Source of the DNA: Wallemia ichthyophaga EXF-994
Lineage: Eukaryota; Fungi; Basidiomycota
Length of the DNA: 32,000 nt
Direction: 5' to 3'
Assembly: GCF_000400465.1 (NCBI RefSeq)
Contig: NW_008806281.1
Location: 120,001-152,000, forward strand
Every line of letters starts with the position of its first letter. The stretch's first letter is position 1. This document shows positions 189-14,346 of this stretch, in pieces. Below the pieces are notes generated by a model. That model had not been told where the DNA came from. It did not search any database and was given only the letters and a program-made list of their open reading frames with translations. The translations under genes were made by a program, and so were the position numbers.

Positions 189-1371
189 CTATTGCGAAGT
201 ATAGAAGTGGTAATCGTCAATGAGAGGTATGTAGTCGCCGACGATGCCTGCTGCAATACCGACCAGTGGCCAATTCTGCAGCCTGCTAACGACTGATTCG
301 ACGCGCGGTTTAGTGAAGTCGTGCCAAATAGGACCCCGAAGCAAGTATCTATGGGATTGTTAGTGGGGTGTATATATTCATAGCATAACCCACCTAATAA
401 ATGATTGCTCCCGTCTATTCTGTTCATTAGCCTCAATGCTTGACTTGTTGACGTCAAACGAGTATGGCGACACACCGCTCCTGCTCTTATGACCATACTT
501 GCGCAGCTGTCTGCTCATTACCGACATGGAAAGCGATAGAAGTAGCGGTGTCCATTCGGATTTGGTTCTCCAAGGTTTAGTGCGCGTCTGTGTCCTAGCG
601 AACTGGCGTCTGAGTGCCAAAACATACACTAGAGGTTCGGCAATAAGCATGAGTTCCGAGAAAACCTGCGCGCCACTACTCAGCGGCCTCACTAATGCAG
701 ATGGCGGAGTGAGTGAGTCAGTATCGAGCGCAGTGGCATGCAAGTAGTTATCGACACTTCCATACTTGGTCTTGAGATCGACTACACTCCTCGCTCCTCG
801 CACACCCCTATTGGCCTCATCGCACTCTGGATCGAGGCTTACATCCTGGTCACGAGAGGGCGTGCATGGCGTTACTAGCGGTCTTAGTTGCGTTTTCAAC
901 AGAATGACTAACTTCAGTGTAAACTTTAACGCTTCAATTGCCGTTATGTAATTCCATCGATGGCGCGCATATCGACCTTGCTCATCGCGCTTTTCTCGCC
1001 GGTGCATCACTATCTCGCCCAGGAGCTGCAGAGAGGTCGTCAAGGAAAGCAGCTTGGCTGATAGGGCGTGCAGGCGTCCCCAGTTGGAGGATGTGTATCT
1101 GCTGTGTGCGTTGAGAGAGTGCTTCGCAGAGTGCGCATCTTGTGATTGTGTGAGCATGTTGAGTGAGCTGAAGACTGTGTAGCGTATTCGTTAGTATTTT
1201 GCTGTGTATACACTATCATCCCTCACTCATCTCGGCTACTAACTCTGAATCGTCGAAGCGGCCAGGAAGTAGCCATGCCAGCGTACGCAGAGTCGGCTCT
1301 ATAGATTTAGAAAGAGCGATTACTTTGTCTTTCCTGTTAACGTTCCTCACGCTACCGATGTCGTTTGACAT
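189..1371 (-). CDS. PEX16: Peroxisomal membrane biogenesis protein Pex16 (3 exons)
   Basis: Spliced product: MSND...TLRTLAWLLPGRFDDSELVAEM / FSSLNML...LLGEIV...IEALKFTLKL... / YLLRGPIWHDFTKPRVES...GDYIPLIDDYHFYTSQ*. The LPGRF and YLLRGP motifs are Pex16 hallmarks. GT-AG introns lie near 1175-1226 and 341-385. Confidence 0.9.
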
Positions 1372-1431
1372 TTTCGTGATGATTGCTAATGACACAAAGA
1401 AATGCGGTAATTATCTTTACACTACTCATAA

Positions 1432-3327
1432 CTAGTTTACAAGTATCAGGCCGTCAATGCGCTCCCCTGTCTCCGTGCGTTTCCAAGACTCAATTGTCTC
1501 TCCCCACTCACTCACATCATACACTCTGAATCTACGGTCGTGGCCCTTCTTCCCGTAGCCCGAGTATGAGCTTCCACCCCCGAAACAGATCCATGTTCCT
1601 TGAATCAGCCTACATTCGTCAGTCAGGTGGCAGTGTCCATGTGCAATCACTCTTATTTCGTTGGTGGTGGTGTCGCTACCGCGGCGGAGCTCGTTAGCGA
1701 CGTTGAAGAAGCCACCATTTATGCCACTCGCACCGTCACCATCTTCAATGCCTTTACTACCCCATCCTTCTATAGGGGTCCCGTTGGCGTCGAGATCGGC
1801 GGGACTGTCGTAGTATTCACGCAAGGGGATGTGCGCAAATACCAATGCGTTAGCTTTTTGTGGTGTTTGTGATATTCTCTTGTGCGTGTCATCGAAGACT
1901 TCGCCTTGCTTTGGTATGAATGGTCGATTCTCTAGTTTGATGTTGTCCGATTCTTCGACGAACCAATCGATCTGATTCTGCGACTGGTGTGAGAAACGAA
2001 AGTAAAACATTTAAGTTCATCGTACCTGTCTGATGTAGTCATACTGCCCCATCATGTTCTTGAATGGGTTGTAACGAGGTGGAGGCAACAGCCCGTGCGT
2101 ATCGAACAAGTACATGGTAAGGAGGTGAGAATTGGTGCCATCAGGGGAGTACACTTTAAGCACATGATTCCCAACGCCGTGGATATCAGAAGGACCAGGC
2201 TGGGCGAGCGAGAAGGGTAATGCCTGAATAATTCTCATCTGCTCCGACCGAGGTAAATCAGTCATCTCAGAATCATGATTACCGAAAATTGCGGTAAATG
2301 GTATCTTTCTCTTAATCACCTCGCTGTAGACCTTGGAAATAACGCTGACAGCATCGAATGACGTACCCTGTCCATTCAACTGATCGCCTGTGAAGACAAC
2401 GAAATCAGGTTTGACGTCGTCGAGAGTCTCTGCCATAAGTTGTATAGAGTCTGGATCACCTTGGCATGGTGACTTGTCAGTGTCTCTGCATGTACCATTG
2501 CCCACGCTGAAATGTAGGTCAGCAATTTGTAGTATGCGGAATTGTCCGTTATCTCTAAATTTCAATTGTTCAGGCTGCTTGGGGTGTTTATAGCCTTTGC
2601 GGATAGTGAAAGTCATGCGTTCATTCTTGGATGACGCGTCTTGGATGTTTGCACCTTGTACGCGCTTGAAGTCTGGCCATGGCGGACCATCACCGAACAA
2701 GATATCAACCTCAGTGACTGCGTCTGATGGCCGTGGATTGGAGGATGGAGGATGAGTGTGGTAGTAGAGGCGGGTGTTTGGTGATGGATTCGATTTAACT
2801 TTGAACCAATTTTCATCCAATTTTTCTGAGCTGTCAGAAGAGAGCAGTTTGATGTCATCAATGTAGCTGACGTCTAGTCTACGAGACCTTCTGTAGTACA
2901 AGTAATTATTCTTATGGCCGCGTCCATTTTGTACATTTAAGCTCATGCCGACTCTAACCCAAGGGCCATACTTGCTGTTATCCTCAGAAGTTGAAGGAGG
3001 ATAACAGCCACCAAAGTAATACTCCAAAGAAGGTGGGAGTGAGCAGCTTCTTATGGTGATATCATTGATGGGTGTGGAATGTGGAAGTATTGGATTCCAT
3101 ATGTCAAGTGGAGCTTCGAGTACGTTGTAATTTGAATCATAGAGGCTGTTGTCGTCGCTGCTGTTGCTGCCGTGATCGACCAATTTCACGTAGTCGTAGT
3201 TCTGCCATTGGAGTGGAAGCAACTGCTTGTGCTTTGGTGTGTAATTCGTACTGAGGAGCGAGTATCGCGATAATAGAATTATCGTTATGAAGCTTGAAAT
3301 TATAAAGCTTAGAAGAAATTGCCTCAT
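1432..3327 (-). CDS. DCR2: Calcineurin-like metallophosphoesterase, DCR2/SIA1 family, with N-terminal membrane anchor (2 exons)
   Basis: Motifs QIADLH, FTGDQL, FGNHD, FAHIPL and AHGHCH, plus CFGGGSSYSGYG. A short GTACGA...CCAG intron near 1990-2030 joins ORFs 2017..3327 and 1432..2010. Confidence 0.88.
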
Positions 3328-7524: not shown

Positions 7525-8876
7525 TTACATGTCCTCTAGTGACCATTTTGCTCGTGGCATGAGTGTGGCAGGATTTGCTAGTTCCCCTTTAGCAAGTTTG
7601 TAGTGGGCTGCCCATGCGATCATGGCGGCGTTGTCTGCGTAAATATGGTAAGAGTGGTTTGCGAGGGGCAAGTTGAGATCAGACCCACCAGTACATAACG
7701 CTGGCGCCGGAAAGTAGATATTCAAGCCATGTCTTCCAGTAACATCTGACAATCTTACCCTTGTTAGCGTGAGCGCATAATCAAATCAAGACACACCTCT
7801 CGCGCAGGTATCCATTACTAGCTACACCCCCACTAACCACCAGACTAGATGGTTCGACGGTAGATTTGCTCAGTGCCAATGTCACCTATTCCCGAGTTCA
7901 GACTGACTGCTGAATTTGACATGCCGTCCACCCACCTTATCAGCCAACTGCGCCACTGCTGCACTCTGGAATGCGCGCGCTAGAGCTACTCTCGTCACAT
8001 CACCGCCGTCACTCTCATCCACCAGCCTCGAGAACGCGCTCCTGAGGCCCGAGTAGCTGAACAGGAGCTGAGAGGGGGCTGGTACGCGCAGCTTCTGTCT
8101 ATACTCTTTGACACGACAATCCACCTCATCTTTATGGCCAAACAAGTGCTCAGTGTGCCTCGCAAACCCCTCCAATGCGGCTCCCGGCGCCTTGCCTGAC
8201 CATGGTATATTGAGGAGCTTAGCGGCGTGATCGAAAGCGTTGCTTGGAGCGTGTGAGTAGACTACGAGATACCAACCATTCTAAACCTACCCTATCGAAT
8301 CGTCGTTTGTCGTCGCCAGCACTCGCATTTTGGTGACTTCTTCCGCGTCGACTATCATCGTGTGTCCTCCACTGCAAAGCAGCGTGTAAAATGGGAATTG
8401 CGGGGGATTCTCTTCTGTCAGACAGCAAGTAAGGGCGTGCGCTTGCTACAATGCTATAGCATGAGATAGAGCTCTATCTGCGAATAACACCCACCCACCA
8501 TGTGATGTACGCCTACTAGCGGTATTCCACTAACCCCGACTAGCGACTTGGCTGCGACCATCGCGATTTGCAAACACCCTTTCATGCCGGGTCCTTCGGT
8601 AGTAGCTATCGCGTCCAAATCCCCAAATGCAACTCCAGCACGACGGATCGCTTCTGAAATTGCAGGCGATATGTTTTTCATGTGTCCTTGCGTTGCGTAC
8701 AGCGGGTGTATCCCTCCGTATTGCTCATGTATTTGATCCTGTTTCATCACCACATTTGATAATATCTCCCGATGGTTGCTCACTATCGCTGCACATGTGT
8801 CGTCTGCTGAGCTCTCCAATGCTAGTATCAGCCGCCGCCGTACGTCTTTGTATACTGGGAATATCGATCTTCGCAT
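7525..8876 (-). CDS. QRI7: Mitochondrial tRNA N6-threonylcarbamoyladenosine transferase (Qri7/OSGEPL1, Kae1/TsaD family), multi-exon
   Basis: LILALESSADDTCAAIV, YGGIHP, IATTEGPGM, VGVHHM, FSYSGLRS, AFQSAAVAQL and DNAAMIAWA are TsaD/Qri7 motifs. The Arg-rich N-terminus looks like a mitochondrial presequence. Confidence 0.92.
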
Positions 8877-9028
8877 GCGATCGTCAAAGTGTAAGGAGAT
8901 GGCGAAGGCGGCGGTGAGAATTTATAATTTGGATGCGTTTAATACAACAAGTATGAATGATTGGATTATGTTCTGCAATTTACTTTTGCGAAAGACTTCC
9001 AAGAGGAGAATAAATGACGATTTATTAA

Positions 9029-11387
9029 TCAAAGTATGGTTATTTGCGAATTTTGACTTGTGTTTCCTGTAAATCGCTTGGCAACGAAAGTCAACACTCT
9101 CAATCCACTCACCATCAACTTCGAGGCATCAGCAGTAGCAGAAACGACGGATCCTGCTTCAGATCCATCCATCAGGTATAAGCGAGCCCTATCATCTAGT
9201 TTGTGGGCATAGTATACGGGTATACCTAATGAAACCGCAAGATTAGCAATCTGGTATGTCATAGATGTCGCGTATATTGTCTGGCTGAGGGTTAGGACAT
9301 TGAATCCAATGTCTTCGTGTAATACGTCATATCTAAATTTCTAGAGGTACCCGTCAAGCCAGAGTGCGTGTAGGCGTAGAATTAAAATTGGTTTGGTCGA
9401 GTGACACTTGGGTGATCAATTATCGTTCCACTCTTGCAGCTGCATGATTTGTTCTGCAGATCATTTCTAAGCGGCGCGAATTTGACGTGAGGCAGCTTCT
9501 GTCTAACCATAACGGTGATCTTTGGAGTTTTGCCACCAATCAGCTCCTTGTATGCTTGAACAATTGCTAGCCTCTCGTGCTGGAGCACCTCTCGGTACTT
9601 GACGTCAGACACGCCATCTCTGACATGCAGAACGTGCCTAGGAATAGCACCTAGATTGCTCTCTCTCTCTGTAAACGTTGACATTTATTTTGGCCATGTT
9701 CTTCAGGTTCTCAATAATCTCCTGGCGTACTCTCAAAGGTACTTTACTGCCTATAAATTTAGGGACACGCTGGTCTGTGTTTGAGACAACTCCAACAATC
9801 GACATAATGGTCCTCATCTCATGAGGAGGGTAGGTAACATCGACACCGAAGCACATCACTCTTTCAGGCTGAGCAAGGTATGGATTGGGTGAAACCAGTG
9901 TATGGTTGACGCCATCTCCTTTCACGTTTATCTTCAAAAAAATATTCGAGACATAGGTTGGCTTGGCATTGATCGCCTTTTTTTGCCACAAATAATTGCG
10001 AAGGAACTCCTACATGTATGTCGCAGTATTGCTAGATGACTGTGTACGTGTTTGATTTTTCAAATTTGCAAGTTGTAAGGACAAAATCTGTCTTCACGTT
10101 CAATCTCTTCGATTCGTTGAGAATTGTCTTGACGCTGGCATTCTCGTTACGCAGGAAGCAAATTGCTGGCTCATGGAGTACCGTCATACCTCTCTTCATA
10201 CACACTGCAACAACATCTTTGAGGAAATTTGTCAGCCATTCGTACTCGTCTGGTCTTCCAAAAGCAAACAGCTTCCAGTTATTAATTGTCGCTGGCTTGA
10301 AGAATGTCATATTTTGTGAATTTCTATCCCATTCCACGTCAGGCTCGCTGGGTTGGATCTGAAGACGGTTGCCGTATTCAAGACTTGATGGCTTGATTAC
10401 TGATGCAGAGCATTCGATGGCATTAGAATCAATTTTGAAGCCAAATTCACTGATGACAGGGTTATTCCTGGAAAGAGACATTGCTTGACCACGATAGTTT
10501 TTCAGTCTCTACAATGACTTAACTTTGCAGAAACTCATTATGTCTTTGGTCTGGGCAGAATTTAAAACCCCGCCTGGATGAATCTGACCTGGGATAATGT
10601 TCAGTAGCTCCATTGAAAAAAATGTCATGCTTTTCCCAATAACGGGTAATTGAAGAAGCCTGAGCACAAAGTTGTGCGTAGATTTAAGATAAGCTGTGTT
10701 GCTCAGCTTTCTCCCATTGTACTCCTCAAATGTGTAAGTGTTTGCATTGTTCACGGAAACGTCTTGGATTTTGAAGGGTTGTTTACGGTTAGGGATGTGA
10801 TTGGTCTCAACCTTGACCTTCTTGAGCTGCTTCTCTAGCTGGCGTCTCATTTGGTTGTTGAGGCGGCGGTTTGGACCGACAGTCATATTTATTGAACCAC
10901 TCAGACTAATCAGCTTTAGGGCTATCGCGTGTAAGCGACCCTCCTACAAAATTTGAATGGACGATGTGTCAATGTTCAAGACAACGTCGTTTGCAGAAAG
11001 CCTTGTTGTACTACAAGGTGTTGAAAAGAAGAGGATCTCGTTGTCGAAAGGAAGCCTCTTTAAGCTATAAAGTAGAGCATGGTCATCGTAAGCAAACATA
11101 TTTCCAAAAGTGACTTCGCGTTCCTGATTTTCATTATTAGCCACACAACAAGGTCTCAGGTTGAGAGATAGAGCGCTTACCAAGAAAAACTTCACAGCGC
11201 GCAAAATATCGTTCCAGCTGCGTATCTTTGGCCTGTCTGCCTCGACGCTCACATCTTACACATGAAACGACTGTTAGCGGACTTTGGGTTTCTCCTTCAG
11301 GGGAAAGAGGTTGGAAGACACCTTCACTTGTTGGTTGGAGATGAATTGCTTTGGTTTTAGCGGTAGGATCACTTTTGAATACGACAT
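9029..11387 (-). pseudogene. AGO: Argonaute (N-L1-PAZ-L2-MID-PIWI) pseudogene
   Basis: Ordered Ago motifs: VKVSSNLFP, FHV*DVSV, AYDDHALLYS, VLNIDTS, PAZ (FSMELLNIIPGQ), NPVISEFGFKI, GVPSQ, YVSNIFLKINVK, FGVDVTYP, RQEII, RDGVSD, SGTIID, FYAYTHSGLTGTSR, PVYYAH...RAR. Six internal stops and three frameshifts. The true start is uncertain: ATG 11387, or the frame may extend to 11675. Confidence 0.93.
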
Positions 11388-12167
11388 TGTGAATGCGTGG
11401 AAATCAAGGTTGAGAACTGGGCAGATTAATTTTACAATAATTCAATTTTCAGAGACTCGAGGCTTTGGTGGTAGCTTAAAGTCAGTCAATTCATTGAGTA
11501 CATCATCGCCAATTTTCTCACTTGACTTCAAACGTGCATCTTTCATCAGCATCTTAAAGCTGGCTAGATGCGTTTTGTAGGCGTTTGATTCAGCTGGTGT
11601 ATTGATAGGAAGCTGAGTTTGAGCCAAGTGCGGACTCCACAAGCTGTGAATCAGGCAAAAGCTGAAAGCATTCATACGTTAATCATGAGTACCATTTGTG
11701 GGTGTTCTTCAAGTCTTCTTCTAAGGATCTATATCATGCACAGTGCTCTAGATAGAAGTCATAATATGGTCAAAAGCGTTACAAGGATTAATATTTTTCG
11801 CCTATCTATACTTCTTGTGCATTGAAAGCTGTGGATTGTAGTGACTCAAAGGGATGCGGTTCTTGGCATGTGTGCCGCAAATTGGGAGGTAACTACGTGG
11901 AGCAACCGGAGGCGCGTGGATGGGTGCTGAGCTGGCTTTTGAAGAACTCTCAAAGAGTTGCAAAGTGCTCTTGTCGCTGGAAAGTCCACGACAACAAACT
12001 TTGACTTGTTTCGATGTTGGCGCACATTTAATACAGCTTCAATATGTAATTACCAACTTCAAGTAGATTGGGGAAGGCGTAAAAACTCGTGAAAACCTCC
12101 AAAATAGAGAATTTCGTATAATAAGTTTTTACGGATATGAATGTTTTAGATCGGATCTTTTAGTATC

Positions 12168-12248
12168 GGTTCGATGGTCTAGGGGTATGATTCTCGCTTT
12201 GGGACACCAATTTGCGAGAGGTCCAGGGTTCAAATCCCTGTCGAACCC
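12168..12248 (+). tRNA. tRNA-Pro(TGG) with a 9-nt intron (12204-12212)
   Basis: Canonical cloverleaf: acceptor GGTTCGA/TCGAACC, C73, anticodon arm CTCGC-TT-TGG-G[acaccaatt]T-GCGAG, T loop GGTTCAAATCC. A T-run Pol III terminator follows. Confidence 0.96.
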
Positions 12249-14346
12249 TTCCTTTTTTTTCCATCGTTTCCAAGTGGATCTTTTTGATAGCACTCGCTCA
12301 GTCATAGTTGTATGGCAGCCTTGAATTGCAATTGGGTATTGCATTCAGTTCTTAGAAGGTAATGAGCCTGAAAATATGTGTGCTGTAGGATATCTCAGCG
12401 GACTTCTAAGTGTTCCCACGTGATTGCGTTAAGTGCTAGAATTTTTTGCTGGTGCTGTCGGCTCGCCGGCTGCTTGAAGTGCGCATCTCTCGATCGCATA
12501 CGCAAACACCATCTGGTGGCAATGCGTATTTCATCAAGCAGTGTCCAAATCAAAAGAATTACACTTCAAGGTAAGAATATTGTTCATTTTGATTTTTTTG
12601 GCCTTTCTGTTGTTTTAGGTTTGCTTGTATTCTTCACTCCTGTCTTGATTTTAATTTAAACTTTTCAACTTGTCAACCGTGTTTGTTTGCTTAAAACCCT
12701 CAAATGGATCATTGAAGAACGCTATTGTACTTTCTAAAGATTTTGAGCTACCGTTCTTGCTTTTCTCGTCTTTCACTTTCTTTTGCAGATCAATCTCCTC
12801 TTCTTTGAGTTGATGGTATCGTCAGTTAGTGCCAAAAGGAAGAAGGCACTAATCGCAGGACATGCTTTTCCCCAATTTTGGAGCAACTCAGTGCCAAATT
12901 TTTCAACCGAAACGTTTCGCGCTGAGGCTTCCTTTGATAACACCCTCTGGTCAAATTCGGGAATTCTCTTTAAACAAATTGATCCTCTTCATAGATTGAA
13001 GGATTAAAAAACCTTATGTTTGGCAAATCATCTAGCGGAGGTAATTGCATGCCGAAATCATCGAAGGTGAAAAATTTAAACTTGCTTTCCCTATTTGCTT
13101 CTTCTTATGATTCGTGATAGTTTTCTACTGGGAATAATAAGTTGTGAATGAGATTGTGAATTTTGTCATGTTCCTAGTGGAAGATTGCCAATGTTGATTC
13201 AGTGTGTTTGTTGGTGAGCTTGGGTGATTGGACAGGCAACCAAATACATAAAATACTGCGAGCGCTAGCACTATAAACAAAAGTGTATTTGCTGCTCCTT
13301 AGCGCTTGCTGTGCATGCAGATAGCCACGTGACTAGCCATGAGGGTATTCGATAACCCACAGTCAGCAATAAGATTAATTGAATGCACCGAAAGCTTTGA
13401 GGAAAATAGCTGAGCAGATATGTTTACGCCGTTAGCCGGTGTTACCGGGAACGAGGGTAGCCGGATTCGTGAAAAACAACAAACACGAGGCGCGAGTCAC
13501 GTGTTTCTTGGCTGCCGCTGCGGTATTTAGGTGGCCCACATTCCTTACTCTTCTCCTTGCGTTAAAACGTCTTGGGGGCCATATTAAGGCAGGTATAATC
13601 CTTTCCCTGTAAATATTCTGCACTAATCCCAGTAAACTTTACCTTCACTGGTTCAACTCTCTCTGAACTTCATTAAGAGCTGGCAGTCCGTTCAAAGTCC
13701 GCTTTGAGTGTTACTCTAAGGAAGTTTGCTATCATCACTTGGACTCTCTAACCTCAACCACCAAGACGAGGCAGTCCGCAGATGATGTAAATGTGATTTC
13801 GCAAAGTTGAAAGAGTTGTACGACTACGACAATTCTATATTTGCAATTTAGATAGCCTTTTCAAATGTCATACCATCCATCGCTTAGCGATATTGGTGTT
13901 TCGCCGTATTTGTTTTTCTGCTCGAGTTCAAGTACGGCTAATCACCAGAGTTGGTATAAGAAATATCCGCCAAGTGCGTGTTTGATATCGCTAGCGATGA
14001 CGTTGCCGTTGTGACGCTGTGTGCGACGTGCGATACGTCTTGGGGATATTCTTGGAAGCAATCGAGGTTGGTTTAGCGTTAACGACCTCACATAATCTCG
14101 TTTAAATTCGTCTTGGGCATTTTGGCGCCATCATATGCACTGTAATCAATTGAAATGCGCTTGGTGCGGCAATTAGCTAGTTGATTTGCAAATCGAATAT
14201 AGTTATCAAGTCTAGATACAACCTCTACACGCTCTAATTCTTACTAACTGCGTCATTATCGCATCATAGTTGCTGGCTTGCCGCTTTTGACCTTCACGCC
14301 AATCAATTTCCTCATTTGGATGAGACGGGACTATAACATAGTACAG

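What the first reader, a model, noticed from the sequence alone, without database searches (positions are those of the whole stretch)
9029..11387. Fossil Argonaute: a near-complete, intron-retaining AGO pseudogene recording loss of an RNAi component
Seen in sequence: the scattered ORFs in the track are pieces of one Argonaute. The frame holds from 11387 to about 9985 across stops at 11274-76, 11256-58, 10944-46, 10509-11 and 10032-34. It then shifts at a T7 run (9978-84) and a (CT)6 run (9659-70), has a stop at 9382-84, and shifts again near 9337-41. Two introns with intact signals remain (11124-11180 GTAAGC..GCTAAT..CAG; 9067-9112 GTGAGT..TTACAG), so this is a decayed genomic copy, not a retrocopy. 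Established knowledge: several small-genome basidiomycetes, including Ustilago maydis, lack RNAi; I recall Wallemia being listed among them but cannot verify that here. Inference: the locus is a datable relic of a recent or lineage-specific RNAi loss, or a dead paralog.
Basis: partly seen in the sequence, partly recalled or inferred. Interest (0 to 1): 0.82.

Follow-up and report, generated by a model that had tools for sequence, protein, structure and literature searches.

The report
Dead Argonaute paralogue in Wallemia ichthyophaga
This is a decayed, non-functional copy of an Argonaute (RNA-silencing) gene in the salt-loving fungus Wallemia ichthyophaga, but the same genome keeps an intact Argonaute elsewhere, so it records the loss of one gene copy, not the loss of Argonaute.

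Summary
Window 9025-11387 (minus strand) is an Argonaute relic with ArgoN, PAZ, ArgoMid and Piwi matches in order across four frame pieces.

It missed two:
- a deletion of about 411 bp at 11034/11033, removing about 95 codons, two introns and part of a third;
- a seventh stop at 9042-9040.

The window is 100% identical to W. ichthyophaga EXF-994 scaffold KE007231.1. The relic is the positional orthologue of intact Argonautes in W. hederae and in an unnamed relative (Logan run SRR25399871).

Three other independently assembled W. ichthyophaga strains share six stops, the large deletion and the -1 deletion. This rules out assembly error. The two repeat-run frameshifts vary in length between strains, and three nonsense mutations are each private to some strains. 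Decay is neutral and still going on.

EXF-994 carries an intact six-exon, 849-residue Argonaute (EOR00032.1) on scaffold KE007237.1, from an older paralogue lineage.

Modest wider interest: reviews list Wallemiomycetes as lacking Argonaute, yet W. ichthyophaga keeps one and W. hederae two. Dicer and RdRP could not be tested.

The parts
11181..11387 (-). Relic of Argonaute exon 1. The conserved ATG is at 11387-11385. In-frame stops at 11276-11274 and 11258-11256.
   Evidence: Alignment with L001, L002 and L003; coordinates; ArgoN hit.
11124..11180 (-). Intron 1, 57 nt (GTAAGC...CAG), kept at the ancestral position.
   Evidence: Same position as intron 1 of the three intact relatives.
11034..11123 (-). 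Relic of exon 2, cut short at its 3' end by the large deletion.
11011..11033 (-). Deletion junction at 11034/11033, followed by the leftover 23-nt 3' tail of intron 4 (polypyrimidine tract and TAG acceptor). About 411 bp is missing relative to L003 1329-1739, about 95 codons of the N/linker region. The breakpoint is ambiguous by about 3 nt.
   Evidence: alignment. The identical junction is present in three other strains.
9113..11010 (-). Relic of the large exon 5 (PAZ, MID, PIWI). Stops at 10946-10944, 10511-10509, 10034-10032 (on the residue equivalent to K533 of human AGO2) and 9384-9382 (only in this strain). Also a 3-bp in-frame deletion at 10624/10623, +1 in the A7 run at 9984-9978, +4 in the (AG)6 run at 9670-9659, and -1 at 9336/9335. 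The DEDH codons are still readable.
9067..9112 (-). Last intron, 46 nt (GTGAGT...ACAG), kept at the ancestral position.
9025..9066 (-). Relic of the last exon. Premature stop at 9042-9040 (TAC>TAA), five codons before the ancestral stop at 9027-9025.
7525..8876 (-). Intact neighbour QRI7/TsaD, immediately downstream. It serves as the synteny anchor shared with W. hederae and L003.
12168..12248 (+). tRNA-Pro gene upstream of the relic, a synteny anchor shared with W. hederae.
   Evidence: blastn match to L002.

Best explanation
Window 9025-11387 (minus strand) equals W. ichthyophaga EXF-994 scaffold KE007231.1 at about 129025-131387. It is a non-processed pseudogene of one of several Argonaute paralogues of the genus Wallemia, here called type A.

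Type A sits between QRI7 and tRNA-Pro. It is intact in W. hederae (E3P99_02408) and in an unnamed closer relative (Logan SRR25399871). In the W. ichthyophaga lineage, selection on this copy was relaxed, presumably because an older paralogue (type B, EOR00032.1 on KE007237.1) covers the function; that step is inferred.

The copy then decayed by ordinary neutral mutation: point nonsense mutations, slippage in a homopolymer and a dinucleotide repeat, a single-base loss and a deletion of about 0.4 kb. Most lesions became fixed before the sampled strains diverged, and new ones are still appearing.

The relic makes no functional Argonaute. The two or three short 'genes' annotated on it are artefacts of gene calling.
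For: - Domain order ArgoN-PAZ-ArgoMid-Piwi over four frames.
- The window is 100% identical to EXF-994 over 13.3 kb.
- Flanking-gene order matches W. hederae over about 22 kb and L003 over about 11 kb.
- L003 has an intact six-exon, 840-residue Argonaute at the same place.
- NJ tree: (relic, L003) 98%; with W. hederae type A 100%; type B sister to type A 99.9%; type C (W. hederae E3P99_03753 plus an ENA protein) 92%. A 3-residue and a C-terminal deletion shared only by the relic, L003 and L002 agree with this.
- Relaxed constraint: the relic has 134 unique amino-acid changes against 45 in L003 (chi2 44). Third codon positions give 131 against 105, not significant. Flanking genes give 42:25 and 14:13. 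dN on the relic branch is 0.141 against 0.045. 21% of residues invariant in four intact Wallemia Argonautes are changed.
- Seven stops are seen; about 9 are expected at 0.1 neutral substitutions per site.
- Three other strains share six stops, the large deletion and the -1. The run lengths differ between strains (A7/A8/A9; (AG)6 against (AG)5). Within-species SNPs in the relic are 19 nonsynonymous, including 3 private nonsense, against 5 synonymous.
- Intact type B copy in the same assembly: its spliced CDS translates exactly to EOR00032.1.
Against: - No expression data were available, so transcription, nonsense-mediated decay or an RNA-level role cannot be judged.
- Redundancy with the type B paralogue is an inference, not a shown cause of the decay.
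- dS between the species is saturated (pS 0.65-0.80), so the dating is rough.
- The placement of type B rests on a neighbour-joining tree of nine sequences, not a likelihood analysis.
- The species behind L003 is unknown.
Confidence: 0.9

Rival explanations
1. One reading: a unitary pseudogene marking loss of RNA interference in this lineage.
For: Reviews and the funRNA survey list Wallemiomycetes with 0 Argonaute, 0 Dicer and 0 RdRP. No W. mellicola or W. sebi relative of this Argonaute family appeared in two protein searches. Dicer and RdRP in W. ichthyophaga were not tested, so the pathway could still be crippled at another step.
Against: An intact Argonaute with all four domains exists in the same assembly and in every sampled strain. 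Its cluster holds five distinct 855-residue forms plus the 849-residue EXF-994 form, with no sign of decay.
Confidence: 0.07
2. The lesions are sequencing or assembly errors and the gene is really intact.
For: Two frameshifts lie in a homopolymer and a dinucleotide repeat, which are classic error sites.
Against: Six stops, the 411-bp deletion and the -1 are identical in four independent assemblies (GCA_000400465.1, GCA_004918745.1, GCA_004917845.1, GCA_004918445.1). Amino-acid evolution on this branch is three times faster than in L003.
Confidence: 0.01
3. The locus still encodes useful short proteins, such as the PAZ-only and MID-only products annotated in EXF-994, or works as a regulatory RNA or small-RNA source acting with the intact paralogue.
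For: The EXF-994 annotation calls a 125-residue PAZ gene and a 149-residue ArgoMid gene here. Other strains have 133- and 211-residue models. Both retained introns keep their splice signals.
Against: - Within-species changes are 19 nonsynonymous to 5 synonymous.
- Private nonsense mutations fall inside the 149-residue fragment: 10236 in L006 and L007, 10355 in L008.
- Gene models differ from strain to strain.
- No + strand ORF in the region has a Pfam match.
Confidence: 0.03

Closest known systems
W. hederae E3P99_02408 (P0002) and the intact Argonaute on Logan contig SRR25399871_1626 (L003), the type A positional orthologues
   Same: - Same place, between QRI7/TsaD and the upstream region.
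- Intron 1 and the last intron lie at the same positions.
- Same clade-specific indels.
- Protein identity to the relic's conceptual translation is 62-64% (W. hederae) and 69% (L003) by BLASTP, or 66% and 70% over common columns.
   Different: They are intact six-exon genes of 824 and 840 codons as respliced here. The relic has seven stops, three frameshifts and about 95 codons missing.
W. ichthyophaga EXF-994 'Protein argonaute-2' EOR00032.1 (P0029; cluster of P0003), the type B paralogue
   Same: Same genome, same protein family, same six-exon structure. 54-57% identical to the relic's conceptual translation.
   Different: - Different scaffold and neighbours (ABC transporter, adenylosuccinate lyase, GAPDH).
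- Intact.
- Lacks the type A indels.
- Branches outside type A.
Loss of RNA interference genes in other fungi: Ustilago maydis against U. hordei, Saccharomyces, and decayed RNAi genes in Cryptococcus deuterogattii. The last case is from my own knowledge. The first two are cited in PMC7763443.
   Same: Lineage-specific loss of Argonaute genes among close relatives, with a relic or synteny gap marking the place.
   Different: Those cases remove the whole pathway. Here only one paralogue is dead and another is intact in the same genome.

Membership tests
Eukaryotic Argonaute (AGO clade), by descent | N, PAZ, MID and PIWI domains in that order | tested here: met
   Pfam ArgoN, PAZ, ArgoMid and Piwi (three collinear stretches) along the minus strand.
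Eukaryotic Argonaute (AGO clade), by descent | Catalytic DEDH tetrad in PIWI | tested here: met
   In the alignment to human AGO2 and AGO3, GVDVT, RQEII, RDGVS and YYAHK align with the GADVT, RQEII, RDGVS and YYAH motifs. I take these from memory to hold D597, E637, D669 and H807. The codons survive only as remnants.
Eukaryotic Argonaute (AGO clade), as a working gene | Uninterrupted reading frame that includes the 5'-phosphate pocket and the C-terminus | tested here: not met
   Seven stops, three frameshifts and about 95 codons deleted. The stop at 10034-10032 replaces the K533 equivalent, and the stop at 9042-9040 removes the last five residues.
Non-processed pseudogene | Homology to a functional gene plus disabling lesions that are not artefacts | tested here: met
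   The lesions are shared by four independent assemblies.
Non-processed pseudogene | Introns kept at ancestral positions, with no poly-A tail or target-site duplications | tested here: met
   Intron 1, the last intron and the tail of intron 4 align with the introns of L001-L003. The locus is syntenic.
Non-processed pseudogene | Neutral evolution | tested here: met
   Relative-rate test 134:45 at the amino-acid level, with third positions equal. Within-species SNPs are 19 nonsynonymous to 5 synonymous, with three private nonsense mutations.
Non-processed pseudogene | No functional product | not testable with these tools
   No RNA-seq or proteome data were available.
Unitary pseudogene marking loss of RNA interference | No intact family member left in the same genome | tested here: not met
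   EOR00032.1 on KE007237.1 is intact.
Unitary pseudogene marking loss of RNA interference | Dicer and RdRP also absent or decayed | not testable with these tools

The most novel reading that the evidence does not exclude
Wallemia may be a genus caught dismantling RNA interference step by step. On this reading there were three ancestral Argonaute lineages (A, B, C). W. hederae keeps A and C. W. ichthyophaga keeps B and carries a decaying A. The W. sebi/W. mellicola group has none. If Dicer or RdRP are already missing in W. ichthyophaga, its remaining Argonaute would be working without Dicer or be next to go. Either way, the textbook entry 'Wallemiomycetes lack RNAi' would need correcting.
Probability: 0.25. 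Interest if true: 0.55.

Novelty: new member of a known kind. Interest (0 to 1): 0.35.

Why it matters
By itself this is an ordinary dead paralogue. Three things make it useful:
1. It corrects the annotation of W. ichthyophaga genomes, where pieces of the relic are called as separate hypothetical genes.
2. Together with the intact copies, it shows that the statement in surveys and reviews that Wallemiomycetes have no Argonaute does not hold for W. ichthyophaga and W. hederae.
3. It offers a small, well-sampled natural series for asking why fungi shed RNA-silencing genes. The series has fixed lesions, segregating lesions and intact orthologues.

Tried and rejected
- **Rfam at gathering threshold** found nothing in the window, not even the tRNA.
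- **dS-based dating** failed because synonymous sites are saturated (pS 0.65-0.80). I used relative rates and excess dN instead.
- **W. mellicola/W. sebi syntenic locus.** I spent the last protein search on the QRI7 exon to fetch it. It returned only unnamed Logan and ENA relatives. The best of them, L009, has QRI7 with no trace of Argonaute in the 3.7 kb upstream, but that upstream side is not syntenic with the window. It therefore cannot distinguish a clean deletion from a rearrangement or from 'never there'.
- **Bacterial-type promoter and terminator scan** is not informative for a fungus.
- **Automatic splicing of the annotated P0003** failed because that model reads six residues into intron 2. 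I respliced it by hand.
- **Literature searches** for Wallemia with Argonaute, RNAi, Dicer or pseudogene found no report of this relic.
- **Rejected: alternative genetic code or programmed recoding.** Flanking genes translate perfectly with the standard code, and the frameshift runs vary in length between strains.

Full report
**1. The observation**

On the minus strand of window 9029-11387, four frame pieces match Pfam in the order of a eukaryotic Argonaute:
- ArgoN, E 2e-4
- PAZ, E 9e-13
- ArgoMid, E 1e-6
- three consecutive stretches of Piwi, E 6e-12, 8e-14 and 1e-6

A conceptual translation finds intact Wallemia Argonautes at E about 1e-277, and tblastn maps them back collinearly across three frames. 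This is far beyond chance.

**2. Anatomy**

I aligned the locus at the DNA level with three intact relatives:
- L001, W. ichthyophaga strain E3P96
- L002, W. hederae
- L003, Logan run SRR25399871

I spliced each relative by hand. All three have six exons and five introns at the same positions.

The window keeps the conserved ATG (11387), intron 1 (11180-11124) and the last intron (9112-9067).
- stops at 11276-74 and 11258-56 (TAC>TAA);
- stops at 10946-44 and 10511-09 (both CAG>TAG);
- a stop at 10034-32 (AAG>TAG);
- a stop at 9384-82 (GAA>TAA);
- +1 in the A7 run at 9984-78;
- +4 in the (AG)6 run at 9670-59;
- -1 at 9336/9335.

Three things were missed:
- About 411 bp, measured against L003, is absent at 11034/11033. 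The gap takes out the end of exon 2, intron 2, exon 3, intron 3, exon 4 and the start of intron 4, about 95 codons. The residues that seem to carry the frame across this point ('LFFSTPCS') are the leftover 23-nt tail of intron 4 plus one exon base.
- Once the last intron is removed there is a further stop at 9042-40 (TAC>TAA), five codons before the ancestral stop at 9027-25.
- There is an in-frame 3-bp deletion at 10624/10623.

Aligned with human AGO2 and AGO3, the relic still shows the four motifs that I take from memory to carry the catalytic residues D597, E637, D669 and H807. The stop at 10034-32 sits on the equivalent of K533; I recall that residue as a 5'-phosphate-binding lysine.

**3. 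Whose genome**

Two window ORFs fall in 90%-identity clusters with W. ichthyophaga proteins. EXF-994 proteins map to the window at 100% once intron gaps are discounted. The window is 100% identical over 13,327 bases to EXF-994 scaffold KE007231.1. From the ranges given, window position w corresponds to record position 120000 + w.

**4. Are the lesions real?**

Three other W. ichthyophaga assemblies (L006, L007, L008) are about 99% identical across the relic. They share the following:
- six of the seven stops;
- the large deletion, with an identical junction;
- the -1 deletion.

The stop at 9384-82 is private to EXF-994; the other strains have GAA there. The homopolymer is A7, A8 or A9 and the dinucleotide run is (AG)6 or (AG)5, depending on the strain.

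Of 24 within-species SNPs in the ancestral frame, 19 are nonsynonymous and 5 synonymous. Two more nonsense mutations are private to other strains: 10236 in L006 and L007, and 10355 in L008. Indels occur in the relic and in intergenic DNA, but in none of the flanking genes.

Assembly error is excluded. The copy is evolving neutrally and is still picking up lesions.

**5. Orthology and history**

Gene order around the relic matches W. hederae over about 22 kb and L003 over about 11 kb. QRI7/TsaD lies just downstream, followed by Ank, EST1, the phosphatase, PEX16 and XPG. tRNA-Pro, SF1 and ANAPC8 lie upstream.

L003 carries an intact 840-residue Argonaute at this place, and W. hederae carries E3P99_02408.

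A bootstrapped neighbour-joining tree on 574 complete columns gives the following support:

| Grouping | Bootstrap |
|---|---|
| relic + L003 | 98% |
| relic + L003 + W. hederae type A | 100% |
| W. ichthyophaga intact Argonaute (type B) as sister to all of type A | 99.9% |
| type C (W. hederae E3P99_03753 + ENA protein P0032) | 92% |

Two deletions shared only by the relic, L003 and L002 agree with this tree. So the intact W. ichthyophaga gene is not a recent copy of the relic. It is an older paralogue.

**6. The intact paralogue**

The P0003 cluster holds six named sequences from W. ichthyophaga strains, including 'Protein argonaute-2' EOR00032.1 of EXF-994. In the same assembly as the window, scaffold KE007237.1:206765-209576 has this gene between an ABC transporter and adenylosuccinate lyase. 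Its six exons translate exactly to the 849-residue protein with no internal stop.

The Dicer half is untested.

**7. Relaxed constraint and rough age**

| Comparison (outgroup W. hederae) | Relic / W. ichthyophaga | L003 | chi2 |
|---|---|---|---|
| Unique amino-acid changes, Argonaute | 134 | 45 | 44 |
| Codon positions 1+2 | 154 | 66 | 35 |
| Codon position 3 | 131 | 105 | 2.9 (not significant) |
| Flanking gene, phosphatase (PAP29) | 42 | 25 | 4.3 |
| Flanking gene, PEX16 | 14 | 13 | 0.04 |

The acceleration is specific to this gene and to replacement sites.

Branch dN is 0.141 for the relic against 0.045 for L003. The excess is about 0.1 per site. At that neutral distance about 9 stops would be expected in 743 codons, and 7 are seen.

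Synonymous sites are saturated (pS 0.65 for the relic against L003), so absolute dating is not possible. As an inference, if dS is about 0.75 per branch, constraint was lost in roughly the last seventh of the branch. That is well before the sampled strains diverged.

**8. Mechanism**

Shown:
- The copy cannot make an Argonaute.
- It decays by point mutation, repeat slippage and deletion.
- The decay is neutral.

Inferred:
- Constraint was lost because the type B paralogue suffices.

Unknown:
- Which lesion came first.
- Whether the locus is transcribed.
- Whether Dicer and RdRP exist in this genome.

**9. Comparison with what is known**

The funRNA survey lists Wallemiomycetes with 0 Argonaute, 0 Dicer and 0 RdRP (PMC4290597). 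A review repeats that Wallemiomycetes have lost RNAi (PMC7763443). From my own knowledge, those counts probably rest on the 'W. sebi' CBS 633.66 genome; I did not verify this.

My two searches found this Argonaute family only in W. ichthyophaga, W. hederae (two genes), one Logan assembly and one ENA metagenome. The next-best proteins are only 25-27% identical. No W. mellicola or W. sebi member appeared. That agrees with the surveys for those species, but the search is not sensitive to very distant Argonautes.

A more distant Wallemia-like contig, L009, has QRI7 with no Argonaute trace upstream. Its upstream side is not syntenic, so it settles nothing.

No paper in the library reports this relic.

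**10. Verdict**

This is a real, well-supported Argonaute pseudogene. It is a dead paralogue in a genome that keeps an intact Argonaute, not a fossil of Argonaute loss. It is ordinary in kind. It has modest value for annotation and for correcting the picture of RNA silencing in Wallemia.

Noticed in passing
window 12168-12248 (+): ARAGORN calls this 81-nt tRNA-Pro with anticodon GGG. Rfam at gathering threshold did not report it, and ARAGORN missed the homologous stretch in W. hederae.
   Followed up: partly
window 10509-10886 and 10032-10481 (-); L005 2442-2819 and 2847-3296; L006 1941-2384 and 2442-3092: Public annotations call fragments of the relic as separate protein genes: 125 residues (PAZ) and 149 residues (ArgoMid) in EXF-994, and 133 and 211 residues in another strain. 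These are gene-calling artefacts on a pseudogene.
   Followed up: yes
L002 10001-10289 (W. hederae E3P99_02408) and L001 about 10360-10384 (W. ichthyophaga E3P96_01913): Two annotated models look slightly wrong. The W. hederae N-terminus starts 82 bases too far upstream with an extra intron; the conserved ATG at L002 10083 gives an N-terminus matching the other Wallemia Argonautes. The E3P96 model reads six extra residues (VWYLTR) into intron 2 compared with the EXF-994 model.
   Followed up: partly
window 192-3327 (-); L006 10001-13139: The phosphatase (615 residues) and PEX16 (361 residues) are separate genes in the EXF-994 annotation. Several other strain annotations fuse them into one 955-residue model.
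   Followed up: no
window 11388-13327: The stretch upstream of the relic shows 2.9% SNP columns between strains, against 0.2-1.0% in the relic and flanking genes. This may be fast-evolving intergenic DNA or an alignment-end effect.
   Followed up: no
L009 1-9089 (Logan SRR33769985): A more distant Wallemia-like contig has QRI7, then an inserted NMO/IMPDH-like gene, then Ank and EST1. It has no Argonaute trace and no tRNA-Pro in the 3.7 kb upstream of QRI7.
   Followed up: partly
L004 10001-12749 (W. hederae E3P99_03753): The third Argonaute lineage (type C) has only two introns in its annotated model, against five in types A and B. I did not check whether this is real intron loss or a model error.
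   Followed up: no
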